64,000 nucleotides of DNA from Leucoraja ocellata. Taxonomy: Eukaryota. The translations under genes and the position numbers were made by a program. The notes under the pieces are model-generated. The model was not told the origin of the DNA, ran no database searches, and worked only from the letters and a program-made list of their open reading frames with translations. How positions within the stretch are numbered: the first letter of the stretch is position 1; each line of letters opens with the position of its first letter. This document shows, piece after piece, positions 30,148 through 63,373 of this stretch. Location: positions 1,488,001 to 1,552,000 of the forward strand of contig JAWMAR010000392.1 of NCBI GenBank assembly GCA_036785375.1, in the 5' to 3' direction.

Positions 30148-30223
30148 ATGGAAAGCTGTAACGTAGCTGTATCACTCCTGCTCGCCGTCTTGTCTCTCTG
30201 CTCTGTGTCGGGAGACCACGCAG
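30148..30223 (+). CDS. MHC class I-like heavy chain, exon 1 (signal peptide)
   Basis: Strong Kozak context ccaagATGG. Encodes MESCNVAVSLLLAVLSLCSVSGDHA plus 1 nt, a hydrophobic leader. Donor cag|gtaag, phase 1, joins in frame to the alpha1 exon. Lies at the end of a CpG-rich unique region. Confidence 0.8.
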
Positions 30224-30257
30224 GTAAGACAGTGTCATTTGGAAAACCAAATTATAT

Positions 30258-30583
30258 TGGATAAGCTTTTCCCACTGAGAGTAGGGAAGATTCAAACAAG
30301 GGGACATGACTTGAGAATTAAGGGACAGAAGTTTAGGGGTAACATGAGGGGGAACTTCTTTACTCAGAGAGTGGTAGCTGTGTGGAATGAGCTTCCAGTG
30401 AAGGTGGTGGAGGCAGGTTCGTTTTTATAATTTAAAAATAAATTGGATAGTTATATGGACGGGAAAGGAATGGAGGGTTATGGTCTGAGCGCAGGTATAT
30501 GGGACTAGGGGAGAATACGTGTTCGGCACGGACTAGAAGGGTCGAGATGGCCTGTTTCCGTGCTGTAATTGTTATATGGTTAT
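30258..30583 (+). mobile_element. CR1 family B (intron 1)
   Basis: ORF2 C-terminus and tail, about 35 nt downstream of the exon 1 donor. Confidence 0.9.
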
Positions 30584-30982
30584 ATTCTTCGGGAAAGTAA
30601 CAGGGGAAACTCAGCGGGTCGGGCAGCACCCGTGGAGGGAAGTGGACAATCTTTGTCCCAGGGAGGGAAATCGGCAGCCAGAAGGCATAGGGTGAGAGGG
30701 GAAAGATTTAATAGGAACATTTTCACTCAGATGGTGTGTGGTGGGAACACGGAATGAGTTGCCAGGGGAAGTATGTAGGAAGAAACTGCAGATACCGGTT
30801 TAACCTGTAGACACAAAATGCTGGAGTAACTCAGCGGACAGGCAGCATCGCTGGAGAGAAGGAACGGCTGACGTTTTGGGTCGAGACCCTTCTTGAGACT
30901 GCGGAGGTAGATGAGGCAGAATCAGTAACAACATTTAAAAGACACATGGACAGGTGCGTGGGTAGGGTAGATAGGTGGAGAG

Positions 30983-31436
30983 TCAACAACTAAGTTACAG
31001 AGATAGGTTGAATAAGTTAGGTCTTTATTCTCTGGAGCGCAGAAGGTTAAGGGGGGACCTGATAGAGGTCTTTAAAATGATGAGAGGGATAGACAGAGTT
31101 GATGTGGACAAGCTTTTCCCTTTGAGAATAGGGAAGATTCAAACAAGAGGACATGACTTCAGAATTAAGGGACAGAAGTTTAGGGGTAATATGAGGGGGA
31201 ACTTCTTTACGCAGAGAGTGGTGGCGGTGTGGAATGAGCTCCCAGTGGAAGTGGTGGAGGCAGGTTCATTGGTATCATTTAAAATAAATTGGATAGGCAT
31301 ATGGATGAGAAGGGAATGGAGGGTTATGGTATGAGTGCAGGCAGGTGGGACTAAGGGGAAAAAAAAATTGTTCGGCATGGACTTGTAGGGCCGAGATGGC
31401 CTGTTTCCGTGCTGTAATGGTTATATGGTTATATGG
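30983..31436 (+). mobile_element. CR1 family B (intron 1)
   Basis: ORF 30975-31334 and tail. Confidence 0.9.
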
Positions 31437-32295
31437 AGAGGGATATGGATCAAATGCGGGCAAATGGGAATAGCTGAGATGGCACATCTTGGTCGGCATG
31501 GCGTGGACGAATTGGGTCGAATGGCCTATTTCTGTACAGTATGATTCTAGGAAGGTTCCCAATCAGAAACGTTGCCTGTCCATTCTCTCTTTGTTATTTA
31601 GACACCAGACGTGCGGGTTTGTAGGTCAATTGGTGGGATAACATAGAACTAGTGCAAACGGATGATCAATGGACAGTATCGACTCGATGGGCCGAATAGC
31701 CTGTTTCCATGCTATATCTTTCAATTCAATTCAGAATATGAGGGATGAGGCTATTTGTAGTTTGTTTGGTTGTTTGTTTGTTTGTCTTTTTGCAGGAGCA
31801 TTTGCCACTTTTCATTTCACTGCACACCTCGTATGTGTATGTGACGAATAAACTTGACTTGAAAAGAGACACAAAAAGCTGGAGTAACTCAGCGGGACAG
31901 TTAGCATCTCTGGAGAGAAGGAATGGGTGACGTTTCGGGTCAAGACCATTCTTAGCCCTAACCCTAACCCATTTCTTAAAATGCTTATTTTAGAGTCAAA
32001 CAGGCCCTTCAGCCCAACTGGTCCATGCTAACCCAGATGTCCCATCTAAGTTAGTCCCACCTGCCCACATTTTGCCTATATCCCTCTAAACCTTTCCTAT
32101 CATGATCACAGTGAATGGCCGTGCTGGCTCGACGGGGCGAATGGCCTCCTCCTGCACCTATTGTCTATTGTCCATCTGTCTATGTGTGTTCAGGGAGGTT
32201 GCTTTGTACACTGCACCTGTGCTGGTGCTTATGGTGAATGGAATATTTCCTGGCCTGTTATGCAATTTTAGCTTAGTTTAGTTTATTATTGTCAC

Positions 32296-32764
32296 ATAAC
32301 CATATAACAATTACAGCACGGAAACAGGCCAACTCGACCCTTCTAGTCCGTGCCGAACACATAATCTCCCCTAGTCCCATATACCTGCGCTCAGACCATA
32401 ACCCTCCATTCCCTTCCCATCCATATAACTATCCAATTTATTTTTAAATGATAAAAAACGAATCTGCCTCCACCACCTTCACTGGAAGCTCATTCCACAC
32501 AGCTACCACTCTCTGAGTAAAGAAGTTCCCCCTCATGTTACCCCTAAACTTCAGTCCCTTAATTCTCAAGTCATGTCCCCTTGTTTGAATCTTCCCTACT
32601 CTCAGTGGGAAAAGCTTTTCCACGTCAACTCTGTCTATCCCTCTCATCATTTTAAAGACCTCTATCAAGTCCCCCCTTAACCTTCTGCGCTCCAAAGAAT
32701 AAAGCCCTAACTTGTTCAACCTTTCTCTGTAACTTAGTTGCTGAAACCCAGGCAACATTCTAGT
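32296..32764 (-). mobile_element. CR1 family B (intron 1)
   Basis: ORF 32444-32758 and tail. Confidence 0.9.
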
Positions 32765-32912
32765 ACTGAGGTACAGTGAAAAGTTATGTTTGCATGCTAT
32801 CCAATCAAAGTAAAGAATATTACTTTGGGCGGCATGGCTTCACAGCAGTAGACTTGCTTGTCTTACAGCGCCAGAGACCCGGGTTGGACCCTGAGCACGG
32901 GTGCTGCCTGTC

Positions 32913-33673
32913 CATAGAAACATAGAAATTAGGTGCAGGAGTAGGCCATTCGGCCCTTCGAGCCTGCACCGCCATTCAATATGATCATGGCTGATCATCC
33001 AACTCAGTATCCCGTACCTGCCTTCTCTCCATACCCCCTGATCCCCTTAGCCACAAGGGCCACATCTAACTCCCTCTTAAATATAGCCAATGAACTGGCC
33101 TCAACTACCCTCTGTGGCAGAGAGTTCCAGAGATTCACCACTCCTCTGCGTGAAAAAAGTTCTTCTCATCTCGGTTTAAAGGATTTCCCCTTTATCCTTA
33201 AGCTGTGACCCCTTGTCCTGGACTTCCCTAACATCGGGAACAATCTTCCTGCATCTAGCCTGTCCAACCCCTTAAGAATTTTGTAAGTTTCTATAAGATC
33301 CCCTCTCAATCTTCTAAATTCTAGAGAGTATAAACCAAGTCTATCCAGTCTTTCTTCATAAGACAGTCCTGACATCCAGGAATCAGTCTGGTGAACCGTC
33401 TCTGCACTCCCTCTATGGCAATAATGTCCTTCCTCAGATTTGGAGACCAAAACTGTACGCAATACTCCAGGTGTGGTCTCACCAAGACCCTGTACAACTG
33501 CAGTAGAACCTCTCTGCTCCTATACTCAAATCCTTTTGCAATGAAAGCTAACATACCATTCGCTTTCTTTACTGCCTGCTGCACCTGCATGCCTACCTTC
33601 AATGACTGGTGTACCATGACACCCAGGTCTCGCTGCATCTCCCCCTTTCCCAATCGGCCACCATTTAGATAAT
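32913..33673 (-). mobile_element. CR1 family A inserted in a V-SINE
   Basis: The SINE tRNA-like head at 32827-32912 and body at 33676-33903 flank the LINE. Confidence 0.9.
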
Positions 33674-34644
33674 ATGGTGTTCCAGAGTTTGTACGTTCTC
33701 CCCGTGACCTGCGTGGGATTACTCCGGGTGCTCTGGTTTCCTCCCGCCCTCCAAAGACGTATAGGTTTGTGGGCCAATTGGCTTGGTAAAATTGTACATT
33801 TCCCTAGTATGTGTAGGGTGGTGTTAGTGCTTATCGGCACGGACTTATTGGGCCAAAGGGCATGTTTCCGCCCTGTATCTCCGAACTAAACTAAACTAAA
33901 CTACACATGGATACATTCAAACAATCCACAGTGCATAGACAAGGACAGTGTACTCGAATTGGGGTGGAAGTGAAACCCGTTGATACAGATGGGCAGTGTG
34001 AACGTTATTGTGAAATGCTGACCCTGGCCAGGCAGCTGATTTCTCATCATCTGTAAGGAAATGAAATCAAGGTTTCAAAAAAGAAAATGTGTATTGTGCA
34101 ATTTCCATATATGCCCTCATTGTGCAGAGGAGGCCATTTGGCCCATCTACTAGCTACTCCAGCAACCTGTGTGAAATTTAAAAAAAATTCAATTCATGGA
34201 AATTTTAAATAAGCACGGTGAATGCTGGATACACTGAAGAAATGTCACAACCTAGGGCAGGGACCTACAAAGTGAAGGGTTGGGCTCTGGGGAGAGTTGT
34301 AGAGCAGAGGGGTCCCATACTTCCTCAAAAGTGACTTCACAGGTAGATAAGGTGGTCAAGAGGACTTTTAGAACACTGGCCTTCATCAGTCAGGGTTTTG
34401 AGTACAGAGGTTGTGATGTTATGTTATGTTACAAGGCACAAGTGCCGTATTATGTTCAGTTTTGCTCATCCTTTTGTGTGGAAAATGTTAGTTTATTTAG
34501 AGATAGAGTATGGAAATGGATCCTTCAGACCACACTGAGTTCCCTGGCGCTCTAAACCTGCTGCCAGCCCAGCTTGTACAGCTTCTTTAACAAGGGGTGT
34601 TAGTGATAGTGGGGCACAGACAGCAAACAAGTGGAGGTGGGTTT

Positions 34645-35275
34645 TTTAAGAAGGAACTGCAGATGCTGGAAAATCAAAGGTACACAAAAATGCTGGAGAA
34701 ACTCGGCGGGTGCAGCAGCATCTATGGAGCGAAGGAAATAGGCAACGTTTCGGGCCGAAACCCTTCTTCAGACTGATGGGGGTAGAAGAAAGGAAAAAGG
34801 AGGAGGAGGAGCCCGAGGGCTGAGGAAGGGGAGGAGACAGCAAGGGCTAACAAAATTGGGAGAATTCAATGTTCATGCCCCCAGGATGCAGACTCCCCAA
34901 GCGGAATATGAGGTGCTGTTCCTCCAATTTCCGGTGTTGCTCGCTCTGGCCATGGAGGAGACCCAGGACAGAGATGTCGGATGGGGAATGGGAGGGGGAG
35001 TTGAAGTGCTGAGCCACCGGGAGGTCAGGTAGGTTCATCAGGGCCAAGCGGAGGTGTTCGACAAAACGATCACCCAGCCTCCGCTTGGTCTCACCGATGT
35101 AGATCAGCTGACATCTAGAGCAGCAGATGCAGTAGATGAGGTTGGAGGAGATGCAGGTGAACCTCTGTCGCACCTGGAACGACTGCTTGGGTCCTTGAAT
35201 GTAGTCGAGGGGGGATGTAAAGGGACAAGTGTTGCATCTCTTGCGGTTGCAAGGGAAAGTGCCCGGGGAGGGAGT
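34645..35275 (-). mobile_element. Penelope 3' fragment (GIY-YIG endonuclease plus terminal repeat)
   Basis: ORF 34847-35173 NLIYCICCSRCQLIYIGETKRRLGDRFVEH...EQHLIFRLGSLHPGGMN. Confidence 0.9.
34744..34773 (-). ncRNA. Minimal type I hammerhead-ribozyme-like motif in the Penelope terminal repeat
   Basis: Minus strand gtCTGAAGAagggt-ttcg-gcccGAAAcgtt: CUGANGA core, stem II with UUCG loop, GAAA and palindromic AACGTT. Stem I is weak. Confidence 0.6.
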
Positions 35276-35877
35276 CGTTTTCCGAGGGGAGGTGGGTGTT
35301 TATTCTGGGATGGTGTCTGCAGGTTGCAGGTGCGTTCATTCTGCCAGAGGAGGTAGTTGATGCAGGAACAACAACATATAAAAGGCATTTGGATAGGAAC
35401 GTTGGTGAGACCACATTTAGAGTATTGTGTTCAGTTCCGGGCACCATGTTATAGGAAAGATATTGTCAAGCTTGAAAGGGTTCAGAGCAGATTTACGAGG
35501 ATGTTGCCAGGACTAGAGGGCCTGAGCTATATGGAGTGGTTGAGTAGGCTGGGTCTCTATTCCTTGGAGGGCAGGAGGATGAGGGGTAATCTTATAGAGG
35601 TGTACAAAATCATGAGGGGAATAGATCAGGTAGATGCACAGTCTCTTGCCCAGAGTAGAGGAATCGAGGACCAGAGGACTTAGGTTCGAGGTGAAGGGGA
35701 AAAGATTTAATAGGAAACTGTAAAGAAGTGATAATGACACACTGTAACTTTACTTCATTTTATTCATACTGTATCTTATACAAAGAGCACTAGCTGGTAT
35801 GTGGTCTGTCACGGAAACTAGAGAGCGATATGTGGGTGGGGAGGTTGTAATTATACTTGTGATATGGGGAGTGGTTA

Positions 35878-36482
35878 GTAACCATATAACCATATAACAA
35901 TTACAGCACGGAAACAGGCCATCTCGGCCCTACAAGTTTGTGCCGAACAAATGTTTTTCCCCTTAGTCCCACCTGCCTGCACTCATACCATAACCCTCCA
36001 TTCCCTTCTCATCCATATGCCTATCCAATTTATTTTTAAATGATACCAATGAACCTGCCTCCACCACTTCCACTGGGAGCTCATTCCACACCGCCACCAC
36101 TCTCTGAGTAAAGAAGTTCCCCCTCATATTACCCCTAAACTTCTGTCCCTTAATTCTGAAGTCATGTCCTCTTGTTTGAATCTTCCCTATTCTCAAAGGG
36201 AAAAGCTTGTCCACATCAACTCTGTCTATCCCTCTCATCATTTTAAAGACCTCTATCAGGTCCCCCTTAACCTTCTGCGCTCCAGAGAATAAAGACCTAA
36301 CTTATTCAACCTATCTCTGTAACTTAGTTGTTGAAACCCAGGCAACATTCTAGTAAATCTCCTCTGTACTCTCTCTATTTTGTTGACACCCTTCCTATAA
36401 TTGGGCGACCAAAATTGTACACCATACTCCAGATTTGGTCTCACCAATGCCTTGTACAATTTTAACATTACATCCCAGCTTC
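35878..36482 (-). mobile_element. CR1 family B (intron 1)
   Basis: ORFs 35963-36241 and 36256-36468, and tail. Confidence 0.9.
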
Positions 36483-37199
36483 TGTGATGAGGTAACTATA
36501 TTAAAGGCACATGCATATCTCATCTACAGAAACTGAGGAATAACCTTTTCACACAATGGGTGGTGGGTGTATGGAACAAGCTGCCAGAGGTAGTTGAGAC
36601 TGGGACTATCCCAATATTTAAGAAACAGTTAGACAGGTACATGGATAGGACAAATTTGGAGGGATATGGGCCAAGCGCAGGTAGGTGGGACTAGTGTAGC
36701 TGGGACATGCTGGCCGGTGTGGGTGAGTTGGGCCGAAGGGCCTGTTTCCACACTGTATCACTCAATGACAATGAAAGGTTTGTTAGGATATGGTCGCCCA
36801 ATTATAGGAAGGATGTCAACAAAATAGAGAGAGTACAGAGGACATCCCGCCCGATCAAACCTTTCATATCCACCTTCTCCCAGCTCACATCTGGCAGAAG
36901 GTACAGAAGTTTGAAAGCGCGCACCACCAGACTCAGGAACAGCTTCGTCCCCTCTGTTATCAGGTTTCTGAGCGGTCCTTCCATAAACTAGGGTACTGTC
37001 CGATTCACCATTACCACGTTGCATACGTTCAACTTTGTTCATGGAACTGTTACACTTACAAGAGAGTCAAGAGAGTTTCATTGTCACGTGTCCCAGATAG
37101 GACAATGAAGTTCTTGCTTGTCAATGCCAAGAACTAAAGATAGACCATTCTTGCCAACATTTGGCCTATCAGGGAACCACCCTGCCTAAGGTCATACGT

Positions 37200-37440
37200 T
37201 TAAGAAGGAACTGCAGATGCTGGAAAATAGAAGATAGACAAAAGTGCTGGAGGAACTTAGCGGGTGCAGCAGCATCTATGGAGCGAAGGAAATAGGCAAC
37301 GTTTCGGGCTAAAACCCTTCTTCAGACTCCCGCTGAAGTTCAACGTCTGAAAAAAGGTTTCGGCCCGAAACGTTGCCTATTTCCTTCGCTCCATAGATGC
37401 TGCTGCACCCGCTGAGTTTCTCCAGCATTTTTGTCTACCT
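37200..37440. repeat. Palindromic Penelope terminal-repeat derivative
   Basis: Arms at about 37232-37327 and 37345-37438 are inverted copies, each ending in the hammerhead-like motif. Confidence 0.75.
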
Positions 37441-38042
37441 GAGGTTATATATTGCCAGCCCTGATTTGTCCTGGTGTTTTCTTGCTTCCAGTGTCCCCAC
37501 CCCCCCCCCCCCCCGTACCCCACTCCACTTAGAATCAGTCTAAAGAAGGGTTCCGATCCGAAACATCACAATCCATTTTCTCCAGAGATGCTCCCTGATC
37601 TGCTGAGTTACTCCAGCAATTTTCTGTCTCTCTTTGGTATAAACCAGCATTTGCAGTTCCTTTTTATGACATCAATGCCTTGCAGCACCAGAGACTGACT
37701 ACGGGTGTTGTCTGTACGGAGTTTGTACGTTCTCCCTGAAACCACGTGGGCTTTTTTCGGGTGCTTTGTCAGTTCATTGACTTTGGTAAAATTGAAAATT
37801 GTCCCTAGCATGTAGGATACTGCGAGTGTATGGGGTGATTGCTGGCCGGCACAGAAGGGCCTGTTTCCTAAAAGGGCTATATCTCTAAAATGTAAAGCAT
37901 ATTTTCTGCATTTTCCCCTATGCTCTATCTATTGTACTCAACTTGAATTAATTTTATTTATGTATAGTATGTCCTGTTTGCATAGCATACAAAACAAAAC
38001 TTGTTGCTGTACCTTGGTACATGGGACAATGATAAATCTATA

Positions 38043-38562
38043 CATTATTGCCATAGAGGGAGTGCAGAGAAGGTTCACCAGACTGATTCCTGGGATGTCA
38101 GGACTGTCTTATGAAGAAAGACTGGATAGACTCGGTTTATACTCTCTAGAATTTAGGAGATTGAGAGGGGATCTTATAGAAACTTACAAAATTCTTAAGG
38201 GGTTGGACAGGCTAGATGCAGGAAGATTGTTCCCGATGTTGGGGAAGTCCAGGACAAGGGGTCACAGCTTAAGGATAAGGGGAAAATCCTTTAGAACCGA
38301 GATGAGGAGAACTTTTTTCACACAGAGAGTGGTGAATCTCTGGAACTCTCTGCCACAGAGGGTAGTTGAGGCCAGTTCATTGGCTATATTTAAGAGGGAG
38401 TTAGATGAGGCCCTTGTGGCCAAGGGGATCAGAGGGTATGGAGAGAAGGCAGGTACGGGATACTGAGTTGGATGATCAGCCATGATCATATTGAATGGCG
38501 ATGCAGGCTCGAAGGGCCGAATGGCCTACTCCTGCACCTAATTTCTATGTCTATGTTTCTAT
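38043..38562 (+). mobile_element. CR1 family A (intron 1)
   Basis: ORF 37960-38466 C-terminus and tail. Confidence 0.92.
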
Positions 38563-38855
38563 ACCCTAACCTATTCCATCAGGCTCTGGAGGTTTAGTTA
38601 AGTTTAGAGATACAGCGTAGAAACAGGCCCTTCAGGGCACCGAGTCCGCACCGACCAGCGATTCCTCGCACATTAAGACTACCCTACACACATTAGGGAT
38701 CATTTTATATTTATACCAAGTCAATTAACCTACAAACCTGTCCGTCTTTGGATGGTGAGAGGAAACCGAGGATATCGGAGAAACCCCACGCAGGTCACAG
38801 GGTGAACGTACAAATTCCGTACAGCCAGGATCGAACCTGGGTCTCTGGGGCTGTA

Positions 38856-39352
38856 GATTCAGATTCAGATTCAATTTTAATTGTCATTGTCAGTGTACAG
38901 TACAGAGACAACGAAATGCATTTAGCATCTCCCTTGAAGAGCGACATAGCAAACGATTTGAATAAAAAAAATAATAAGTGTCCGGGGGGGGGGGGGTGGT
39001 GATTGGCAGTCACCGAGGTACGTTGTTTAGTAGAGTGACAGCCGCCGGAAAGAAGCTGTTCCTCGACCTGCTGGTTCGGCAACGGAGAGACCTGTAGCGC
39101 CTCCCGGATGGTAGGAGGGTAAACAGTCCATGGTTGGGGTGAGAGCAGTCCTTGGCGATGCTGAGCGCCCTCCGCAGACAGCGCTTGCTTTGGACAGACT
39201 CAATGGAGGGGAGCGTGGAACCGGTGATGCGTTGGGCAATTTTCACCACTCTCTGCAATGCCTTCCGGTCGGAGACAGAGCAGTTGCCATACCATACTGT
39301 GATGCAGTTGGTAAGGATGCTCTCGATGGTGCAGCGGTAGAGGTTCACCAGG
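38856..39352 (-). mobile_element. Rex1/Babar-type LINE 3' fragment
   Basis: YRCTIESILTNCITVWYGN...LLPSGRRYRSLRCRTSRSRNSFFP and a (TCTGAA)n tail. Confidence 0.85.
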
Positions 39353-39354
39353 AA

Positions 39355-47090: not shown

Positions 47091-47092
47091 CT

Positions 47093-48327: not shown

Positions 48328-48380
48328 AAGGTAATGTCCTCTGTGTTAAATTAGTGACGTTACTCTCCATTCTTCCCCAG

Positions 48381-53831: not shown

Positions 53832-53871
53832 GCTCCACCCCATTACCCTGCTATAGGAAGGGTGTCAATTA

Positions 53872-54922
53872 ACATAGAAACATAGAAATTAGGTGCAGGA
53901 GTAGGCCATTCGGCCCTTCGAGCCTGCACCGCCATTCAATATGATCATGGCTGATCATCCAACTCAGTATCCCGTACCTGCCTTCTCTCCATACCCCCTG
54001 ATCCCCTTAGCCACAAGGGCCACATCTAACTCCCTCTTAAATATAGCCAATGAACTGGCCTCAACTACCCTCTGTGGCAGAGAGTTCCAGAGATTCACCA
54101 CTCTCTGCGTGAAAAAAGTTCTTCTCATCTCGGTTTTAAAGGATTTCCCCTTTATCCTTAAGCTGTGACCCCTTGTCCTGGACTTCCCTAACATCGAGAA
54201 CAATCTTCCTGCATCTAGCCTGTCCAACCCCTTAAGAATTTTGTAAGTTTCTATAAGATCCCCTCTCAATCTTCTAAATTCTAGAGAGTATAAACCAAGT
54301 CTATCCAGTCTTTCTTCATAAGACAGTCCTGACATCCCAGGAATCAGTCTGGTGAACCGTCTCTGCACTCCCTCTATGGCAATAATGTCCTTCCTCAGAT
54401 TTGGAGACCAAAATTGTACGCAATACTCCAGGTGTGGTCTCACCAAGACCCTGTACAACTGCAGTAGAACCTCTCTGCTCCTATACTCAAATCCTTTTGC
54501 AATGAAAGCTAACATACCATTCGCTTTATTTACTGCCTGCTGCACCTGCATGCCTACCTTCAATGACTGGTGTACCATGACACCCAGGTCTCGCTGCATC
54601 TCCCCCTTTCCCAATCGGCCACCATTTAGATAATAGTCTGCTTTCCTGTTTTTGCCACCAAAATGGATAACCTCACATTTATCCACATTATACTGCATCT
54701 GCCAAACATTTGCCCACTCACCCAGCCTATCCAAGTCACCCTGCAGTCTCCTAGCATCCTCCTCACAGCTAACACTGCCCCCCAGCTTAGTGTCATCCGC
54801 AAACTTGGAGATATTGCCTTCAATTCCCTCATCCAGATCATTAATATATATTGTAAATAGCTGGGGTCCCAATATATATTAATGATCTGGATGAGGGAAT
54901 TGAAGGCAATATCTCCAAGTTT
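53872..54922 (-). mobile_element. CR1 family A with 5' fold-back
   Basis: ORF 53964-54872 (FADD motif) uninterrupted, with an inverted duplication at the 5' junction. Confidence 0.93.
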
Positions 54923-55567
54923 AAGCTGGAATGTGTACTGAGAAGATTTATGAGGATGTTGCTAGGACTTTGGGGCCAATTATAGGGAGAGATGGGGCAG
55001 GTTAGGACTTTATTCCTTAGAGCGCAGGACTCAGAGGGGTGATCTTACAGCAGTTTATAAGATTATGAGGGGAATAGATAAGGCAAATGCATAATCTGTT
55101 AACCAGAGTAAGGGAATCAAGAGCCAATGGTACCAAGGTGAGAAAGATTTAATAGAATTTGAGGAGTAACTTTTTCACACAGGGGACGGTAGGTATATGG
55201 AAAGAACTACCGGAAGAGGTAGTGGGGGCAGATACCATAACAGATCTTTGGATAGGAAAGGGTTATGCGCCAAACCTGGGCAGGTGGGACGGATGTAGAT
55301 GGGACATCTTGGTTGGCAAGGGCAAGTTGGGCTGAAGGGCCTGTTTCCATGCTCTATGACTATGACTCTACCAGCTGCAACAGAGCCAAATTAGAAATCG
55401 ATAACTTTCTCAAAACTGGTATGCTAAATGAATTTTCCCATTATATTAGTTCATTCTGGAGCCCCAAAATTGTGTTTAAAGATCCCATTGTATTTTCCTG
55501 GTGTTACCTACATAGATCAACAATGTTCTTCCTTACACATGTGGTGGTACCTGTTCAACAGATTTCA

Positions 55568-56229
55568 AGGGTGGTAAAGAAAGCTTTTGGTATGCTAGCC
55601 TTTATAAATCAGAACATTGAGTATAGAAGTTGGGATGTAATGTTAAAATTGTACAAGGCTTGGTGAGACCAAATCTGGAATATGGTGTACAATTTTGGTC
55701 GCCCAATTATAGGAAGGATGTCAACAAAATAGAGAGAGTACAGAGGAGATTTACTAGAATGTTGCCTGGGTTTCAACAACTAAGTTACAGAGATAGGTTG
55801 AATAAGTTAGGTCTTTATTCTCTGGAGCACAGAAGGTTAAGGGGGGACTTGATAGAGGTTTTTAAAATGATGAGAGGGATAGACAGAGTTGACGTGGAAA
55901 AGCTTTTCCCACTGAGAGTAGGGAAGATTCAAACAAGGGGACATGACATGAGAATTAAGGGACTGAAGTTTAGGGGTAACATGAGGGGGAACTTCTTTAC
56001 TCAGAGAGTGGTAGCTGTGTGGAATGAGCTTCCAGTGAAGGTGGTGGAGGCAGGTTCGTTTTTATCATTTAAAAATAAATTGGATAGTTATATGGATGGG
56101 AAGGGAATGGAGGGTTATGGTCTGAGCGCAGGTATATGGGACTAGGGGAGATTATGTGTTCGGCACGGACTTGAAGGGTCGAGATGGCCTGTTTCCGTGC
56201 TGTAATTGTTATATGGTTATATGGTATAT
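55568..56229 (+). mobile_element. CR1 family B (intron 4)
   Basis: ORF 55630-56145 and tail. Confidence 0.92.
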
Positions 56230-56577
56230 GCTGCAAACGTTCAGAAGGTTAAGTTTCATTTGTGGTAAGTGAAACAGAGTAACGAGATCAAATATCCTTC
56301 ATCAGTGTTCTGATGCTAGTTGCAAAACCAGTTTGACTGTTTTACTGGAACTGATGCAACTTGAAAGCTATTTTTGTTCAAAGAATGGAAGTGTTCATGA
56401 CGTAAGAATGGAAGATGCGTTGGTTGGTATGCAGTAAGACTTAGAGATACAATGTGGGCATTGTTACAACATCATTAGTCTCGGATGGTCTGTGTTAACA
56501 CTTGAGCAACCTTGCGTAGAAAGGAATTTCAGATAGATGCTGGTTTAAATCGAAGACAGACACAAAGTGCTGGAGTA

Positions 56578-57029
56578 ACATAGAAACATAGAAATTAGGT
56601 GCAGGAGTAGGCCATTCGGCCCTTCGAGCCTGCACCGCCATTTAATATGATCATGGCTGATCATCCAACTCAGTATCCCGTACCTGCCTTCTCTCCATAC
56701 CCTCTGATCCCCTTGGCCACAAGGGCCACATCTAACTCCCTCTTAAATATAGCCAATGAACTGGCCTCAACTACCCTCTGTGGCAGAGAGTTCCAGAGAT
56801 TCACCACTCTCTGTGTGAAAAACGTTCTCCTCATCTCGGTTTTAAAGGATTTCCCCCTTATCCTTAAGCTGTGACCCCTTGTCCTGGACTTCTCCAACAT
56901 CGGGAACAATCTTCCTGCATCTAGCCTGTCCAACCCCTTAAGAATTTTGTAAGTTTCTATAAGATCCCCTCTCAATCTCCTAAATTCTAGAGAGTATAAA
57001 CCAAGTCTATCCAGTCTTTCTTCATAAGA
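56578..57029 (-). mobile_element. CR1 family A (intron 4)
   Basis: ORF 56670-56975 and tail. Confidence 0.92.
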
Positions 57030-57414
57030 CCATCTCTGGAGAGAATGGGTGATGTTTCGGGTCGAGACCTTTCTTCAGCAACCTTGCTTTGAGAACAGTC
57101 CAACATGTATAGCAGACCGTGTTTATGTCCACAGTTACAGTCATAGAACCATAATGTGTGGAAACAGGCCCTTCGGCCCAGCTTGCCCATGCCAGCCAAG
57201 GTGCACCAACAACTCCATCCTCACCTGCCATGTTTGGTCCATATACCTCTAAACATTTCCTGTCCACGTACCTATCCAAATGTTTTTAAAAGCTGTGATA
57301 ATTTCTGCTAACTACCTCATCCGGCGGCTCATTTCATACCCACCACCTGCTGTCGGGAAAAGTTGCCCCTCAAATTGCTATTAAATCTTTCCCCTCTCAC
57401 CTTAAACCTATCTC

Positions 57415-58290
57415 CTCGCGGTGCGACTCTCGTCAGCAGCGGCCTCTGCAGCCCGTCTGCGTTTTAATTATTTTTTGTCTATGTTTTATGTAGTTTTTGT
57501 TATTTTTGTTGGGGTATGTGTGTGGGGGGGGGGGGGGGGGGGTGGGGGTGGGGGTGGGGTGGGAGGGAGGGGGTAACTTTTAATCTCTCCCTGCACGGGA
57601 GACCCGACCTTTTCTTTGTCGGGTCTCCGTTGTCGTTGGGGCTGCAACGAGGAGCGGCCTCCAACAGGAAGACTGGGGGCTCTGGTGCCGACGACTCACC
57701 TCACCGTCGCGGAGCTGGCCGAGTCCAGAGCGGGTGGAGCGGTGGTGGAGCGCTGCTGCTGCTGCGGCCCGACCTCCGGAGATTCGGAGGCTGCAACTGC
57801 GGGTCTGGCGGACGGCGGCACCGGGAGCCCGCGGGTCCCTGGAGGGAGACTGCTTTTCAGGGCTCCCGCAACGGCGACTTCTCCCGCCCGAGTTGCGGGG
57901 TCGAAGAGCTCCTGGAACGGGGCCTCACAGCACCGCTCCGCGCGGCTTGGAATGGCCGCGGGACTCTGCGAGCGCACGCCGGGGGCTCTAACATCAAGAA
58001 CCCGGTGTGCGACCTTGCATCACACGGCGTGGCTTAAATGGCCGCGGGACAATCGCCATCGCCAGCCGGGGGCTTTGACTTTGACTCTGTCATCGGGGGG
58101 GGGGGGGGGGGGGGGAGTGCAGTGGAGAGATAAGTTTTTTTGGCCTTCCATCACAGCGATGTGATGGATGTTTATGTAAATTATGTTGTGTCTTGGGTCT
58201 AGTTGTTTGTAATGTATGGCTGCAGAAACGTCATTTCGTTTGGACCTCAAGGGGTCCAAATGACAAATAAATTGTATCTTGTATCTGTAT
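57415..58290 (+). mobile_element. Non-autonomous GC-rich retroelement with a LINE-type tail
   Basis: GC-rich head, T-rich tract, G-runs and CpG-rich body, ending aaataaattgtatcttgtatctgtat. Confidence 0.55.
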
Positions 58291-58804
58291 TTTGCTTCCC
58301 CTACTGTGGGTAAAAGACTGTGCATCTTCACTTCCTGAAGCCCATCACAATCTCCTTGTTTGCAGTCAACACAAGAAACTCCAAAAGCTGGGGATGTTGA
58401 GGAAAACAGAAAGGGCTGTACAAGCTCAGGCGGTCAGGTTGCCACTGTGGAGGGAAATGGAACAGGTGGCGTTTGGGGTCGGACACAAGGAAGTGCAGCG
58501 GAATCCTGAACAAAACACAATGTGCTGGAGTAACTCAATGGACTAGGCAGCACCTGTGAAGGGAATGGACTCAAAGAACTTCAGATGCTGTAATCCTGAG
58601 CATGAGATTCGACTCGAAGCGTTGCCTGTCCATTTCCCTCCACAGATGCTGCCTGACCCACTGGGTTCCTCCTCTACTCATTTCATAAGTAACAGGAGCA
58701 GAATTAGGCCATTCAGCCCATCAAGTCTACTCCACCTTTCAATCATGGCTGATCTATATCTCCCTCCTAACCCCATTCTACTGCCTTCGCCCCATAACCC
58801 CTGA

Positions 58805-59563
58805 TAGAAACATAGAAACATAGAAATTAGGTGCAGGAGTAGGCCATTCGGCCCTTCGAGCCTGCACCGCCATTCAATATGATCATGGCTGATCATCCAA
58901 CTCAGTATCCGTACCTGCCTTCTCTCCATACCCCCTGATCCCCTTAGCCACAAGGGCCACATCTAACTCCCTCTTAAATATAGCCAATGAACTGGCCTCA
59001 ACTACCCTCTGTGGCAGAGAGTTCCAGAGATTCACCACTCTCTGCGTGAAAAAAGTTCTTCTCATCTCGGTTTTAAAGGATTTCCCCTTTATCCTTAAGC
59101 TGTGACCCCTTGTCCTGGACTTCCCTAACATCGGGAACAATCTTCCTGCATCTAGCCTGTCCAACCCCTTAAGAATTTTGTAAGTTTCTATAAGATCCCC
59201 TCTCAATCTTCTAAATTCTAGAGAGTATAAACCAAGTCTATCCAGTCTTTCTTCATAAGACAGTCCTGACATCCCAGGAATCAGTCTGGTGAACCGTCTC
59301 TGCACTCCCTCTATGGCAATAATGTCCTTCCTCAGATTAGGAGACCAAACTGTACGCAATACTCCAGGTGGGTCTCACCAAGACCCTGTACAACTGCAGT
59401 AGACCTCTCTGCTCCTATACTCAAATCCTTTTGCAATGAAAGCTAACATACCATTCGCTTTCTTTACTGCCTTGCTGCACCTGCATGCCTACCTTCAATG
59501 ACTGGTGTACCATGACACCCAGGTCTCGCTGCATCTCCCCCTTTTCCAATCGGCCACCATTTA
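58805..59563 (-). mobile_element. CR1 family A (intron 4)
   Basis: ORF 58883-59359 and tail. Confidence 0.92.
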
Positions 59564-60169
59564 GCCTTACTAATCAAGAATCTATCTCTGTCTTACAAAT
59601 ATCCACTGACTTGGCCTCCACAGCCGTATGTGGCAAAGAATTCCACAGATTTGCCACCTATCTGAATAAAGAAATTCCTTCTCATCTCCTTCCTAAAAGA
59701 ACGTCCTTTAATTCTGAGGCTATGACCTCCTCTGTCGTGGGGTAGACTGAGACTGACTCTCACTTCCCACCCTCTCCCCTCCCCAATCTTTACACATCCC
59801 CAATCCTTTCCACTCGTCACTTTAATTTCATGGTTCATATATTTTGTGTTTTTACGACTGTGGGCAGATCAATTTCCTTCCTCGGATGAATAAAGTTCTA
59901 TCGTGTCTTATCGTTCACCCATCTTCGAGCACTGCGTACATAGCTCAGCATTTCAAGTACACATTTAGCCAGCTTAAATGTGGTGCGTGTTTCTAGCTCC
60001 ATCACACTCTACCAGCAATGATTTCTAGACACCTCCCACCTCTGTGTGGAAAATGTTTCAAACTCTCCTCCAAATCCTACCGATCACATCCAATCTTTCA
60101 TTTTGTTTTGACTGCTCTGTTAAGGACAGTAGGTCTTCCCTATTTACTCTGTTCAGGTCCCTTATTAAA

Positions 60170-60986
60170 TAAATGTGGATAAATGTGAGGTTATCCATTT
60201 TGGTGGCAAAAACGGGAAAGCAGACTATTATCTAAATGGTGGCCGATTGGGAAAGGGGGAGATGCAGCGAGACCTGGGTGTCATGGTACACCAGTCATTG
60301 AAAGTAGGCATGCAGGTGCAGCAGGCAGTAAAGAAAGCGAATGGTATGTTAGCTTTCATTGCAAAAGGATTTGAGTATAGGAAGCAGGGAGGTTCTACTG
60401 CAGTTGTACAGGGTCTTGGGTGAGACCACACCTGGAGTATTGCGTACAGTTTTGGTCTCCAAATCTGAGGAAGGACATTATTGCCATAGAGGGAGTGCAG
60501 AGATGGTTCACCAGACTGATTCCTGGGATGTCAGGACTGTCTTATGAAGAAAGACTGGATAGACTTGGTTTATACTCTCTAGAATTTAGAAGATTGAGAA
60601 GGGGATCTTATAGAAACTTACAAAATTCTTAAGGGGTTGGACAGGCTAGATGCAGGAAGATTGTTCCCGATGTTAGGGAAGTCCAGGACAAGGGGTCACA
60701 GTTAAGGATAAGGGAAATCCTTTAAAACCGAGATGAGAAGAACTTTTTTCACACAGAGAGTGGTGAATCTCTGGAACTCTCTGCCACAGAGGGTAGTTGA
60801 GGCCAGTTCATTGGCTATATTTAAGAGGGAGTTAGATATGGCCCTTGTGGCTAAGGGGATCAGGGGGTATGGAGAGAAGGCAGGTACGGGATACTGAGTT
60901 GGATGATCAGCCATGATCATATTGAATGGCGGTGCAGGCTCGAAGGGCCGAATGGCCTACTCCTGCACCTAATTTCTATGTTTCTA
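60170..60986 (+). mobile_element. CR1 family A (intron 4)
   Basis: DKCEVIHFG through to the tail, with several 1-bp indels. Confidence 0.92.
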
Positions 60987-61023
60987 AACCAACCCTCAGC
61001 TTCCTACTTTCCTAAGAGAGAGG

Positions 61024-61290
61024 AACGGTGGTGCAGTGGTAGAGTTACTGCCTTACAGTGCCCGAGACCCAGGTTCGATCCCGACTGTGGGAGTTGGCTG
61101 TATGGAGTTTGTATGTTCTCCCCGTGACCGCATGGGTTTTCTCCTAGATCTTCGGTTTCCTCCCACACTCCTAAGACGTAAAAGTTTGTACGTTAATTGG
61201 CTGGTGTAAGTGTAAAATTGTAAATTGGCTCTCGTGTATGTGTAGGATAGCGTTAATGTGCGGAATTGGCTGTATCTTTAAACTAAAAAT
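61024..61290 (+). mobile_element. tRNA-derived V-SINE (HE1-like); further copies near 22565, 23500, 32827, 37700, 38595, 41300, 52470 and 53310
   Basis: Pol III A box tggtgcagtgg and B box ggttcgatccc, V-domain-like ggagtttgtatgttctccccgtgacc...ggtttcctcccacactcc, and an (ACTAA)n-type tail. Confidence 0.75.
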
Positions 61291-61663
61291 AACCTAAAGA
61301 ACCACAGCCTATTCAAATATTCCTGACATGGGCAATGGGTCATCTTGGTCAGCAAGAACAAATTGGGCCAAAGGGCCTTTTTCTGTGCTGGATGACTATG
61401 GCTAATTTACTCAGCCTCTGTAAATCTCACCTGCATCATTGGCAGGGTCCTGGAGTGTATTATAGAGCAGAGTAATCTTGTACAGGGTTCCATGACAGTG
61501 GCATCAAAGGTATTTAGGGCGGTATAGAAGGCTATTGGTACATTGGTCTTCATCAGACATGGTATTGAGGATAGAAGTTGAGACGTTACATTTGTACAAG
61601 ACGTTGGTGAGGCCACAGTTGGAGTATTGTGTTCAGTTTTAGTCATCCTGCCATAACAAGGAT

Positions 61664-62129
61664 ATAACCATATAAACCATATAACAATTACAGCACGGAA
61701 ACAGGCCATCTCGACCCTTCTAGTCCGTGCCGAACACATAATCTCCCCTAGTCCCATATACCTGCGCTCAGACCATAACCTCCATTCCCTTCCCATCCAT
61801 ATAACTATCCAATTTATTTTTAAATGATAAAAACGAACCTGCCTCCACCACCTTCACTGGAAGCTCATTCCACACAGCTACCACTCTCTGAGTAAAGAAG
61901 TTCCCCCTCATGTTACCCCTAAACTTCAGTCCCTTAATTCTCATGTCATGTCCCCTTGTTTGAATCTTCCCTACTCTCAGTGGGAAAAGCTTTTCCACGT
62001 CAACTCTGTCTATCCCTCTCATCATTTTAAAAACCTCTATTAGGTCCCCCCTTAACCTTCTGCGCTCCAAAGAATAAAGCCCTAACTTGTTCAACCTTTC
62101 TCTGTAACTTAGTTGCTGAAACCCAGGCA
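61664..62129 (-). mobile_element. CR1 family B (intron 4)
   Basis: ORF 61768-62133 and tail. Confidence 0.9.
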
Positions 62130-62608
62130 CCATGTCATTAAGATGGAAAGAGTGCAGAGAAGATAAACAAGGGTGTTGCTAGGACTCAACAGACTGAGCA
62201 TAGGGATGTCTGAATTAGGGTCTTGACCCGAAGCATCACTTATTCCTTTTCTCCAGAGATGCTGCCTGACCCGCGATGTTAGTCCAGCTTTTTACCTGTA
62301 TATTTTGAGCATCGGGAGAGGTTAGATAGGCCAGAACTTCTTAGAGCACAGGAGGCTGAGGGGTGATCTTTTCAAGGTGACTAACTCATGAGGGGAATAG
62401 ATAGGGTGAATGCCCAGTCTTTTATCCAGGATAGGGGAATCAAGAACCAGAGGGTATATGTTTAAGATGAGTGGGACAAGATGTAATAGGAAGCTGAGGG
62501 AGTTTGAGGGTGGTGGGTATATGGAACGAAATGCCAGAGGAGGTAGTTGAGGCAGGTACTATAACAGCATTTAAGATACTTGGACTGATACATGGACAAA
62601 TAGGATTA

Positions 62609-62897
62609 GACATGACTTCAGAATTAAGGGACAGAAGTTTAGGGGTAACATGAGGGGGAACTTCTTTACTCAGAGAGTGGTAGCTGTGTGGAATGAGCTT
62701 CCAGTGGAAGTGGTGGAGGCAGGTTCGTTGGTATCATTTAAAAATAAATTGGATAGGCATATGGATGAGAAGGGAATGGAGGGTTATGGTATGAGTGCAG
62801 GCAGGTGGGACTAAGGGAAGAAAGTTGTTCGGCACGGACTTGTAGGGCCGAGATGGCCTGTTTCCGTGCTGTTATTGTTATATGGTTATATGGTTAT
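62609..62897 (+). mobile_element. CR1 family B (intron 4)
   Basis: ORF2 end and tail. Confidence 0.88.
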
Positions 62898-63287
62898 AAG
62901 ATGGGGCATCATGGTTGGCAAGAATGAATTTTCACTGTACCTCAGTACACGTGACAATAAACCACACTAACTATACCAAAGAGTTGGGAAAGTTAGCTGT
63001 ATGACCCTAAGACATATAAAGAGGGTGGCAAATCTGAGGAATGTTTTGCCACACAAGGCTGTGTAGGCCGTCAGTGGATATATTTAAGGCAGATAAATAG
63101 ATTCTTGATTAGTACAGGTTTCAGAGGTTATGGGGAGAAGGCAGGAGAATTGGGTTAGGAGGGAGAGATAGAGCAACTATGGCAGAGTAGACTTGATGGG
63201 CCGAATGGCCTAATTCTGCTCTTATCGCTTATGATCTTATGATCTATGTTCTTCGCCTAATATCTACTGTATTTGCTTGCTGGGCAG

Positions 63288-63373
63288 GTGTTGGTGGGCC
63301 ACGTGATGCATTTGGAGCTAGTTACATGCTGGTGCTCGTGGCTACGCTTGTGATGATCATTGGAACATGGTAG
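63288..63373 (+). CDS. MHC class I-like heavy chain, exon 5 (linker plus hydrophobic C-terminus and stop)
   Basis: Acceptor ...ttgcttgctgggcag. Phase-1 reading gives GVGGPRDAFGASYMLVLVATLVMIIGTW*(TAG 63371-63373). It sits in one of the few non-repeat islands downstream of alpha3, and the exon continues to a consensus donor ag|gtgagt at 63414/63415. An intervening small exon cannot be excluded. Confidence 0.7.

What the first reader, a model, noticed from the sequence alone, without database searches (positions are those of the whole stretch)
30148..63373. Complete, highly divergent non-classical MHC class I-like gene buried in 33 kb of repeats
Seen in sequence: five exons with canonical GT-AG sites, all phase 1, splice to a 951-nt open CDS (316 aa) in the order leader-alpha1-alpha2-alpha3-hydrophobic tail. 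There are no stops or frameshifts even though the surrounding DNA is decayed repeat. Established: this is the class I heavy-chain exon layout, and cartilaginous fish carry classical UAA plus several non-classical lineages (UBA to UGA). Inference: this is a functional single-copy (within this window) non-classical gene whose alpha2 is so diverged that it may belong to a poorly described or unnamed lineage. I cannot assign the lineage from sequence alone.
Basis: partly seen in the sequence, partly recalled or inferred. Interest (0 to 1): 0.9.

Follow-up and report, generated by a model that had tools for sequence, protein, structure and literature searches.

The report
Skate UFA class I gene, intact
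This is a correctly read, intact and transcribed skate copy of UFA, an already named MHC class I-like gene of sharks and rays that is thought to present lipids, so it is real but not a new lineage.

Summary
Five exons (30148-30223, 41023-41271, 44952-45221, 48381-48650, 63288-63373) have AG/GT borders, are all phase 1 and sum to 951 nt without internal stops. Sixteen of 16 independent 316-aa proteins carry the residues predicted at all four junctions and the same C-terminus. They are 14 transcript-derived Logan proteins from contigs of 1,349 nt or less, Leucoraja erinacea XP_055521808.1 and Amblyraja radiata XP_032903622.1. RNA contigs leave the genome exactly at the exon 3 acceptor and the exon 4 donor.

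The gene is a functional non-classical class I gene, but its lineage is named. All three ectodomain exons match PDB 8GM8 best, and alpha2 matches nothing else in the PDB. Foldseek titles 8GM8 "shark nonclassical MHC CLASS I, UFA". A gene tree of 27 relatives follows the shark/ray species tree, so this is the skate UFA orthologue. Papers call UFA CD1-like and lipid-binding.

Three smaller points may be new. All 25 full-length members end in a short hydrophobic, GPI-signal-like tail. The family has an extra alpha2 cysteine pair. Skate sequences vary mainly in alpha1 and alpha2. I never joined the window's exons.

The parts
30148..30223 (+). Exon 1: start codon and signal peptide (25 codons plus 1 base), donor GTAAGA
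   Evidence: 21-23 of 25 residues are identical to the leaders of the 15 listed Leucoraja-type 316-aa proteins.
30224..41022 (+). Intron 1, 10,799 nt, phase 1, repeat-rich
   Evidence: 63% of it matches other places of the window. LINE-tail ORFs lie inside it.
41023..41271 (+). Exon 2: alpha1 domain
   Evidence: Pfam MHC_I E=2.5e-9. Best PDB match is 8gm8_A at 1.3e-17. 97% identical to P0025 and 82% to the A. radiata protein.
41272..44951 (+). Intron 2, 3,680 nt, phase 1
   Evidence: 65% repeat. An RNA? contig of run X1 stops matching the genome at 44951, which is the acceptor.
44952..45221 (+). Exon 3: divergent alpha2 domain with four cysteines
   Evidence: No Pfam hit. The only PDB match at E<=10 is 8gm8_A (UFA), 4e-14, over the full length. 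RNA depth is 0.7-3.1 in X24 and 1-5.3 in X1, and 0 in the next intron bin.
45222..48380 (+). Intron 3, 3,159 nt, phase 1, with a LINE reverse-transcriptase fragment at 47127-47960
   Evidence: 39% repeat. Pfam RVT_1 E=8.4e-24. Very high two-strand RNA depth on the repeat parts only.
48381..48650 (+). Exon 4: alpha3 Ig C1-set domain
   Evidence: Pfam C1-set E=1.5e-13. 8gm8_A is the best PDB match at 1.8e-26. An X1 contig lies on 48460-48652 and then runs on for 218 letters off the genome, which marks the donor.
48651..63287 (+). Intron 4, 14,637 nt, phase 1
   Evidence: 68% repeat. No other class I-like exon lies inside it.
63288..63373 (+). Exon 5 coding part: Gly-rich connecting piece, 16-residue hydrophobic end and TAG stop, with no cytoplasmic tail
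   Evidence: 27 of 27 residues are identical in 9 of the 15 listed cluster members, and the other 6 differ at one residue. The same tail-less architecture is seen in 25 of 25 full-length family members.
63374..63415 (+). 14 open codons after the stop, ending at a CAG|GTGAGT donor-like site. Probably 3' UTR.
   Evidence: Its use in RNA was not tested. The stop before it is shared by the whole family.

Best explanation
The window holds the skate orthologue of UFA, from a Leucoraja-type skate whose species was not determined. UFA is a named non-classical MHC class I lineage of sharks and rays.

Shown: the encoded chain has a class I alpha1/alpha2 platform and a C1-set alpha3 domain. It has lost most of the residues that hold peptide ends in classical class I molecules. 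It carries a second, family-specific cysteine pair in alpha2. It ends in a short hydrophobic segment with no cytoplasmic residues.

Inferred: like nurse-shark UFA, it pairs with beta2-microglobulin and holds a lipid in a hydrophobic groove for display to T cells. This rests on the papers' statements, not on my data. Also inferred: the C-terminal segment is a signal that is cut off and replaced by a GPI anchor. The molecule would then sit in the outer leaflet without the tail-borne endosomal sorting that CD1 uses.
For: Gene model.

Transcripts: a cluster of 42 proteins was found, 15 were listed, and all 15 are 316 aa. Fourteen come from Logan contigs of 1,116-1,349 nt. Together with the A. radiata protein, all 16 have the predicted junction residues and end.

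Reads: an X1 contig of 359 nt lies on 44951-45177 with 130 letters running off at the acceptor. An X1 contig of 411 nt lies on 48460-48652 with 218 letters running off at the donor; the 2 extra letters 'GT' fit the start of exon 5. X24 raw RNA gives depth 0.7-3.1 on exon 3, with first mates on one strand only, and 0 in the intron bin 45281-45407.

Lineage: 8gm8_A is the best PDB match for alpha1 (1.3e-17) and alpha3 (1.8e-26) and the only match for alpha2 (4e-14). Its PDB title names UFA, and it ranks first for the AlphaFold model of the near-identical P0031 (E=1.5e-26, TM 0.79 on target length). P0044, the 8GM8 chain, is from Ginglymostoma cirratum. The tree of 27 proteins splits sharks from batoids with 100/100 support, and skates form one clade.

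Constraint: window versus A. radiata shows 25 of 171 differences in alpha1+alpha2 against 3 of 89 in alpha3 (Fisher p=0.005).

Peptide anchors: in the alignment to the classical-type chain 6a2b, the helix motif T..KW aligns with N..ST, and the two alpha2 tyrosines align with T and A. The Y of 'SHSLxY' and of 'EYW' are kept. Which positions count as canonical is recalled.

Tail: 25 of 25 full-length members end in a hydrophobic run (mean Kyte-Doolittle 1.9-2.8 over the last 15 residues, 0-1 charged residue). It is preceded by small residues (GGVG...) 7-10 residues upstream.

Lipid binding and CD1-likeness: passages of PMC10751288 and PMC12562908.
Against: No read or contig shown by read laying spans the joint 45221/48381. 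Only 15 of 64 joints were printed, and exon depth is low. Two of the four runs laid (X7, X21) show no depth on the exons.

None of the 15 listed proteins is identical to the window: they differ at 6-13 of 312 compared residues. The transcripts therefore come from other alleles, individuals or closely related species.

By sequence UFA is not closer to CD1 than to other class I molecules. In the profile search CD1 scores 1.2e-29, behind a classical-type chain (2.5e-42), MR1 (7.7e-40) and ZAG (4.5e-33). No CD1 chain is among the rows shown of the Foldseek list, which run to rank 50.

The model's alpha2 region has low confidence (pLDDT 55-70). No GPI predictor was available, and a tail-less membrane anchor is not excluded.
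Confidence: 0.9

Rival explanations
1. It belongs to a new, unnamed non-classical class I lineage.
For: Alpha2 is unrecognisable to Pfam. It has only 3 real relatives at E<=0.001 among 1.84 billion representatives. RefSeq names for family members are inconsistent: MR1-like, CD1d-like, HFE homolog, ZAG-like.
Against: All three ectodomain exons hit nurse-shark UFA best. The Leucoraja protein scores 1.1e-71 to UFA against 1.4e-35 to UGA and about 2e-27 to other class I chains. The gene tree follows the species tree, with the UFA chain inside the shark clade.
Confidence: 0.03
2. It is a recently dead or dying pseudogene that only looks open.
For: Expression is low in the runs laid, and 2 of 4 runs show none on the exons. 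The window's sequence equals none of the 15 listed proteins. No canonical AATAAA or ATTAAA lies between the stop and the window's end.
Against: The 951-nt frame is open across five exons that sit in 61% repeat DNA. The same 316-aa length holds in A. radiata and in 15 of 15 listed cluster members. Alpha3 is much more conserved than alpha1/alpha2. All eight cysteines of the reference row P0031 are present in the window's exon pieces, and all splice sites are intact.
Confidence: 0.03
3. It is UFA, but the C-terminal hydrophobic run is a tail-less transmembrane anchor, or is combined with an alternative 3' exon or read-through that gives a cytoplasmic tail. It would then not be a GPI signal.
For: The skate run is 16 residues and could just span a membrane. 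After the TAG there are 14 open codons rich in Arg that end at a good donor, with an acceptor 95 nt on. Narcine has RefSeq isoforms with other C-termini.
Against: The stop lies at the same place in 25 of 25 full-length members from sharks and rays, so a 'fossil' tail would have to be older than that split. Fourteen open codons are expected by chance about half the time (my arithmetic: (61/64)^14). Small residues sit at the expected distance upstream of the run; the GPI rule itself is recalled.
Confidence: 0.35
4. It is UFA, but it does not present lipids. It would be either an empty or closed-groove molecule with another job (like ZAG, HFE or FcRn) or a binder of small metabolites (like MR1).
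For: Profile matches to MR1 and ZAG are stronger than to CD1. I saw no ligand data myself. The lipid claim rests on 'unpublished data' and a personal communication.
Against: The 2025 review states that crystal structure and mass spectrometry suggest lipids like those of human CD1d. The residues that hold peptide ends are lost.
Confidence: 0.15

Closest known systems
Nurse shark UFA (PDB 8GM8, UniRef A0ABF7PPZ1_GINCI)
   Same: It is the best match of every ectodomain exon. It shares the divergent alpha2 with its four cysteines, the INATW sequon and the alpha3 motifs. About half of the residues are identical. In the tree it lies in the shark clade that is sister to the batoid clade, which holds the skate gene.
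   Different: The species belongs to another elasmobranch superorder. Identity in alpha2 is only about 40-45%. The crystallised chain lacks the leader and tail, so the tail cannot be compared with it.
RefSeq models XP_055521808.1 (Leucoraja erinacea) and XP_032903622.1 (Amblyraja radiata), both named 'MHC class I-related gene protein-like'
   Same: Both are 316 aa, with the same junction residues (A. radiata has E instead of D at junction 1) and the same tail-less hydrophobic C-terminus; L. erinacea ends ...IIGTW like the window, A. radiata ...IVGTL.
   Different: The window differs from the L. erinacea model at 10 of 312 compared residues and from A. radiata at 36 of 312. The RefSeq name points to MR1, which the data do not support as the nearest relative.
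Shark UGA (PDB 9CH4)
   Same: It is the second-best PDB relative of alpha1 and of the whole family profile (8.8e-13; 2.2e-48). The 2025 review also calls it CD1-like.
   Different: It gives no match to the alpha2 exon at E<=10. It lacks the extra cysteine pair in the alignment shown.
CD1 (chicken CD1 3JVG, human CD1c 9QWJ)
   Same: It is a class I-like heavy chain with a C1-set alpha3 domain. The papers claim a functional likeness, namely lipid binding.
   Different: It is not the nearest by sequence or fold. UFA has no cytoplasmic tail, so it lacks the tail-borne sorting that sends CD1 to endosomes (passage; the tyrosine motif is recalled). UFA is MHC-linked according to PMC10751288.
GPI-linked class I-like molecules of mammals (mouse Qa-2/Q7, ULBPs; recalled, not tested)
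   Same: They share the C-terminal architecture: ectodomain, small residues, then a short hydrophobic end with no cytoplasmic residues.
   Different: There is no specific sequence relationship. The RefSeq name 'Q7 alpha chain-like' for one Hypanus member is an automatic label.

Membership tests
MHC class I heavy-chain superfamily | Exon-per-domain layout leader/alpha1/alpha2/alpha3/anchor with phase-1 introns | tested here: met
MHC class I heavy-chain superfamily | Alpha1 matches the class I profile and alpha3 is a C1-set Ig domain with its cysteine pair | tested here: met
   MHC_I 37.4 bits (cut-off 28.3) and C1-set 51.3 bits. C216 and C271 are present in 27 of 27 family rows.
MHC class I heavy-chain superfamily | Alpha2 disulfide (the equivalents of Cys101 and Cys164) | tested here: met
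   C119 is present in 27 of 27 rows and C180 in 25 of 27. Both are present in the window's exon 3. That they bond is inferred.
MHC class I heavy-chain superfamily | Association with beta2-microglobulin | not testable with these tools
   No complex was modelled.
UFA lineage of elasmobranchs | Closest relative is the reference UFA chain in every domain, including the lineage-specific alpha2 | tested here: met
   The alpha2 exon hits only 8gm8_A.
UFA lineage of elasmobranchs | Orthology: the gene tree is congruent with the species tree, with skate genes in one clade | tested here: met
   using the 97-98% identical Leucoraja proteins as stand-ins for the unjoined window exons. No outgroup lineage was included, so the root is at the midpoint only.
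UFA lineage of elasmobranchs | Location in the MHC class Ib cluster (with UDA/UEA, near b2m and brd2) as stated in PMC10751288 | not testable with these tools
   The window holds no other gene. Unchecked scan notes place two other class I genes 101 kb and 124 kb upstream on the same piece.
UFA lineage of elasmobranchs | Single or low copy number (PMC12562908) | tested here: inconclusive
   There is one copy in the window and one RefSeq protein per skate was found. Mobula birostris and Hemitrygon akajei, however, each have 6 distinct 90%-identity clusters, which counts isoform models too.
UFA lineage of elasmobranchs | Lipid ligand | not testable with these tools
   This rests only on statements in papers.
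CD1 | Closer in sequence or fold to CD1 than to other class I families | tested here: not met
   CD1 scores 1.2e-29, behind a classical-type chain at 2.5e-42, MR1 at 7.7e-40 and ZAG at 4.5e-33. No CD1 chain is among the rows shown of the Foldseek list, which run to rank 50.
CD1 | Cytoplasmic tail with a tyrosine-based endosomal sorting motif (recalled) | tested here: not met
   The chain ends with the hydrophobic run.
Classical class I (UAA type) | Conserved residues that bind the peptide's two ends (recalled set of eight) | tested here: not met
   In the alignment to 6a2b only the two alpha1 tyrosines are kept. The T..KW motif and both alpha2 tyrosines are replaced.
GPI-anchored proteins | C-terminal hydrophobic run with nothing after it, and small residues 7-10 positions upstream (recalled rule) | tested here: inconclusive
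   The pattern is present in the window and in 25 of 25 full-length relatives. No trained predictor and no experiment were available.

The most novel reading that the evidence does not exclude
UFA, the oldest known CD1-like lipid presenter, is GPI-anchored in all sharks and rays. It therefore lacks the tail-driven endosomal recycling that defines CD1 biology. In skates it is also polymorphic, mainly in alpha1 and alpha2. That would make it a lipid-raft-resident, allele-variable presenter rather than a monomorphic CD1 analogue. I found no mention of either point in the searchable papers. The primary UFA paper was not in the library and may already say so.
Probability: 0.4. Interest if true: 0.5.

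Novelty: already known. Interest (0 to 1): 0.3.

Why it matters
The finding shows that a tool-less reader can reconstruct a 33-kb, five-exon immune gene correctly from raw sequence. The gene itself adds little, because the UFA lineage is named, has a crystal structure and is modelled in RefSeq for two skates.

Three family-wide observations might interest a comparative immunologist. The first is the tail-less, GPI-signal-like C-terminus, conserved from sharks to rays. The second is an extra cysteine pair that is mostly kept or lost together. The third is many copies in stingrays and mantas, against the 'single- or low-copy' description.

If UFA really is the ancestor-like counterpart of CD1, the lack of a sorting tail bears on where early lipid presentation took place in the cell.

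Tried and rejected
Pfam and the ESM Atlas on the alpha2 exon alone gave nothing useful. Pfam found no family. The Atlas recognition value was 1772, below the 2300 mark, and the nearest clusters were bacterial hypothetical proteins at 0.89-0.90.

The fourth hit of the representative search (P0004, 1,295 aa, nine repeated stretches, unnamed) was set aside as a repeat-driven chance match. It was left out of every alignment and count.

A bacterial-type promoter and terminator scan upstream of the ATG was the wrong tool for a vertebrate gene and found nothing.

I looked for a second copy or an alternative anchor exon in the window and found none.

I considered the open codons after the stop as a relic cytoplasmic tail. 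I rejected that as the main reading because the stop is family-wide.

I tested 'CD1 family member' by sequence profile and by fold and rejected membership.

I could not compute dN/dS, see tissue distribution, see the letters of the contigs' overhangs, or read the two J Immunol papers on shark class Ib lineages (not held).

Paper searches for a primary UFA report found none: '8GM8' (0 papers); UFA+shark+CD1+lipid (8 papers, 2 relevant); CD1-like+elasmobranch+nonclassical+crystal structure; shark+MHC class I+lipid+crystal structure+nonclassical; UFA+UGA+shark+MHC. GPI-anchored+MHC class I+elasmobranch returned 2 irrelevant papers. For PMC10751288 and PMC12562908 I saw search listings and passages only. 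Supplements were closed and I did not ask for them. The supplementary files of PMC10751288 may list UFA coordinates in elasmobranch genomes.

Rows left out: P0006, P0020, P0022 and P0024 (short isoforms or fragments), P0003 (superseded by P0043), P0023 and P0041 (other Narcine isoforms) and P0028-P0040 were not put into alignment A1 or the tree.

Full report
What is there. Each of exons 2-5 is preceded by AG. Exons 1-4 are followed by GTAAGA, GTATGT, GTAGGT and GTAAGT. The lengths add up to 951 nt, every intron splits a codon after its first base, no exon piece contains a stop, and a TAG ends the frame at 63371-63373. I translated and searched the exons one by one.

Domains. The alpha1 piece passes Pfam's MHC_I threshold (37.4 bits against 28.3). 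The alpha3 piece is a C1-set Ig domain (51.3 bits). The alpha2 piece, the leader and the tail match no Pfam family at E<=1. A tblastn of the five pieces against the whole window finds only themselves, and the next best E-values are 0.5-0.9. There is therefore one copy and no hidden alternative anchor exon. The gene span is 61% intra-window repeat, while each exon is 0%. The introns hold reverse-transcriptase fragments.

Is the model real? An open frame that runs from exon 2 into intron 2 (41034-41579), scored over its first 79 residues, found two proteins among 4 candidates. One is P0025, from Logan assemblies, 97% identical. The other is the Amblyraja radiata RefSeq protein P0026, 82% identical. 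P0025 stands for a cluster of 42 sequences. Of these, 40 were read and 15 listed, and all 15 are 316 aa. Fourteen come from contigs of 1,116-1,349 nt, and one is Leucoraja erinacea XP_055521808.1. A contig that short can hold the 951-nt frame of a 33-kb gene only if it is spliced RNA.

All 16 proteins carry G, V, G at junctions 2-4, as the split codons predict. Junction 1 is D in the 15 cluster members and E in A. radiata. All 16 end at the same place, the 15 cluster members with ...IIGTW and A. radiata with ...IVGTL. None is identical to the window, which differs from the 15 cluster members at 6-13 of 312 compared residues. The members differ from each other by 1-15 residues, median 9. Only one window residue, A7 in the leader, is private. 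The window therefore lies inside the diversity of this cluster. It comes from a Leucoraja-type skate, but not from the assembly behind the RefSeq model. I could not name the species.

Reads. I laid four runs on 44900-48700. In X1 (contigs, guessed RNA, organism A), a 359-nt contig lies on 44951-45177 with 4 differing letters, and 130 further letters do not continue into the intron. That is what splicing at the 44952 acceptor gives. A 411-nt contig lies on 48460-48652 with 2 differing letters and runs on for 218 letters off the genome. The two extra matching letters, GT, are also the first two letters of exon 5.

In X24 (raw oligo-dT RNA, organism A, about 5% of the run read), exon 3 has depth 0.7-3.1, with first mates on one strand only. 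The neighbouring intron bin has 0, and the exon 4 bins have 0.3-1.9. X7 and X21 (organisms B and C) show nothing on the exons. No joint 45221/48381 was among the 15 joints printed, and 49 more were not shown. The reads thus support two splice sites and low expression, while the protein cluster supports all four junctions.

Which lineage. Against all PDB chains, 8gm8_A is the best match of alpha1 (1.3e-17) and alpha3 (1.8e-26). It is the only match of alpha2 at E<=10 (4e-14, end to end, sharing all four cysteines). Against 1.84 billion cluster representatives, alpha2 has four hits at E<=0.001. Three are class I-like proteins of a stingray, a basking shark and a bamboo shark. The fourth is a repeat protein that I set aside.

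Searches from those proteins gave 19 batoid relatives and 11 relatives, mostly from sharks. Among the latter is P0044, a 265-aa 'MHC class I protein' of Ginglymostoma cirratum that corresponds to the 8GM8 chain. I aligned 27 of them (A1) and folded the Leucoraja protein P0031, which differs from the window at 6 residues. The model has mean pLDDT 72 and is weak in alpha2.

Foldseek ranks 8gm8_A first (E=1.5e-26). It prints its title as 'Crystal structure of shark nonclassical MHC CLASS I, UFA', released 2024-11-27. 9ch4 ('...UGA', released 2026-03-18) is rank 8. The maximum-likelihood tree splits sharks from batoids (100/100). It puts the skates in one clade (100/100) beside Narcine and a Pristis-plus-stingray group. 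The nurse-shark UFA pairs with Chiloscyllium. The root is at the midpoint only, because I had no outgroup sequence as a stored protein. The gene is the skate orthologue of UFA.

What is known about UFA. [quoted passage not shown] According to that review, crystal structure and mass spectrometry suggest lipids like those of human CD1d. Five searches found no primary UFA paper in the library. It may exist in a journal that is not held.

How it probably works. Shown here: a class I platform plus a C1-set domain. Alpha3 is much more conserved than alpha1/alpha2 between the window and A. radiata (3 of 89 against 25 of 171 differences, Fisher p=0.005).

The alignment with the classical-type chain 6a2b shows loss of the alpha2 motifs that hold peptide ends. 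T..KW aligns with N..ST, and the two tyrosines around the helix cysteine align with T and A. The two alpha1 tyrosines are kept. The list of canonical positions is recalled.

A second cysteine pair in alpha2 is present as a pair in 22 of 27 rows. Both cysteines are missing in 4 rows and one is missing in 1 row, all in one stingray subclade. This pattern suggests a disulfide.

Inferred from the papers: the groove holds a lipid, and the complex with beta2m is shown to T cells.

By my own tests UFA is not a CD1 family member. The family profile scores UGA at 2.2e-48, a classical-type chain at 2.5e-42, MR1 at 7.7e-40 and ZAG at 4.5e-33, and only then chicken CD1 at 1.2e-29. No CD1 chain appears among the rows shown of the Foldseek list, which run to rank 50. 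'CD1-like' is thus a statement about function, not about descent, as far as these tools can see.

The tail. The window's last exon encodes a Gly-rich stretch and a 16-residue hydrophobic end, with nothing after it. The same architecture is seen in 25 of 25 full-length members from six shark and eight batoid species (the skate counted once). The two remaining rows are the crystallised ectodomain and a partial Scyliorhinus model. Mean hydropathy of the last 15 residues is 1.9-2.8, with 0-1 charged residue.

By the recalled rule for GPI signals, this is a GPI-attachment signal. The rule asks for a small residue site, a spacer of about 7-10 residues, and a hydrophobic end with no cytoplasmic residues. 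I had no predictor and no experiment, so a tail-less membrane anchor remains possible. I put it at about one third.

The open codons after the stop (RRAAMRREVRCDNR, then CAG|GTGAGT) were noted by the scan as a possible fossil tail. Since the stop is shared by the whole family, I read them as 3' UTR that is open by chance. The review does not mention GPI (0 occurrences). A search for GPI-anchored class I in elasmobranchs gave only 2 irrelevant papers.

Verdict. The gene is a real, working non-classical class I gene, but it belongs to UFA, a lineage that is named, crystallised and already modelled in RefSeq for two skates under an MR1-like label. What remains of interest are family-wide features that I could not find in print: the GPI-type end, the extra cysteine pair, the many copies in stingrays and mantas, and variation concentrated in alpha1/alpha2 among skate sequences. 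In the last case, 17 of 28 variable sites among 16 sequences lie in alpha1/alpha2 and 3 in alpha3. These sequences may mix alleles and species.

Noticed in passing
window 41023-45221 (as protein positions 26-198 of the 316-aa cluster): Among 15 listed cluster members plus the window there are 28 variable residues: 10 in alpha1, 7 in alpha2, 3 in alpha3, 6 in the leader and 2 in the tail. Combinations look shuffled (for example S/N/K at 76, M/T at 79, A/V at 171, A/T at 175). This could be allelic polymorphism with recombination, a mixture of species, or chimeric contigs.
   Followed up: partly
relatives P0007-P0021 (Mobula, Hemitrygon, Hypanus): UFA-type genes are multi-copy in stingrays and mantas. 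Mobula birostris and Hemitrygon akajei each have 6 distinct 90%-identity clusters, some of which may be isoform models. They fall into two old paralogous groups, unlike the 'single- or low-copy' description in PMC12562908.
   Followed up: partly
alignment A1, first-sequence positions 142 and 149: The extra cysteine pair in alpha2 is kept in 22 of 27 rows. Both cysteines are lost in 4 rows and one in 1 row, all within one Hemitrygon/Hypanus subclade. In that subclade a 4-residue deletion removes the second cysteine.
   Followed up: partly
window 63374-63600: After the TAG there are 14 open, Arg-rich codons that end at CAG|GTGAGT, with an acceptor-like site at 63510. No AATAAA or ATTAAA lies between the stop and the window's end, so the 3' UTR may be spliced or may run past 64000.
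   Followed up: partly
window 28956-29953: The upstream region holds a 200-N gap (28956-29155, left untouched). It is followed directly by 31.5 copies of a 15-nt G-rich unit (29166-29637) and by a CCCTCT-type run at 29908-29953, about 200-1,000 nt upstream of the start codon.
   Followed up: partly
window 2771-5765, minus strand: Neighbouring long ORFs encode a reverse transcriptase (RVT_1, 7e-18) and a tyrosine recombinase (Phage_integrase family, 7e-9). This is the gene pair of a DIRS-like retroelement; the class name is recalled.
   Followed up: partly
relatives P0023, P0041, P0042 (Narcine bancroftii): The RefSeq isoforms differ at the C-terminus. The 316-aa form has the hydrophobic end, while the 305-aa form P0023 ends in a charged sequence (the 303-aa form's end was not printed). 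This hints at a secreted splice form.
   Followed up: no
same genome piece, about 101 kb and 124 kb before the window's start: Unchecked scan notes report two further class I genes upstream on the same piece. That would fit a class Ib cluster as described in PMC10751288.
   Followed up: no
window 45408-45661 and 47059-48328: Intron repeats draw very high RNA depth on both strands in all four runs (thousands of reads), with many rearranged joints. These are expressed LINE/SINE copies elsewhere in the genome, not this gene.
   Followed up: no
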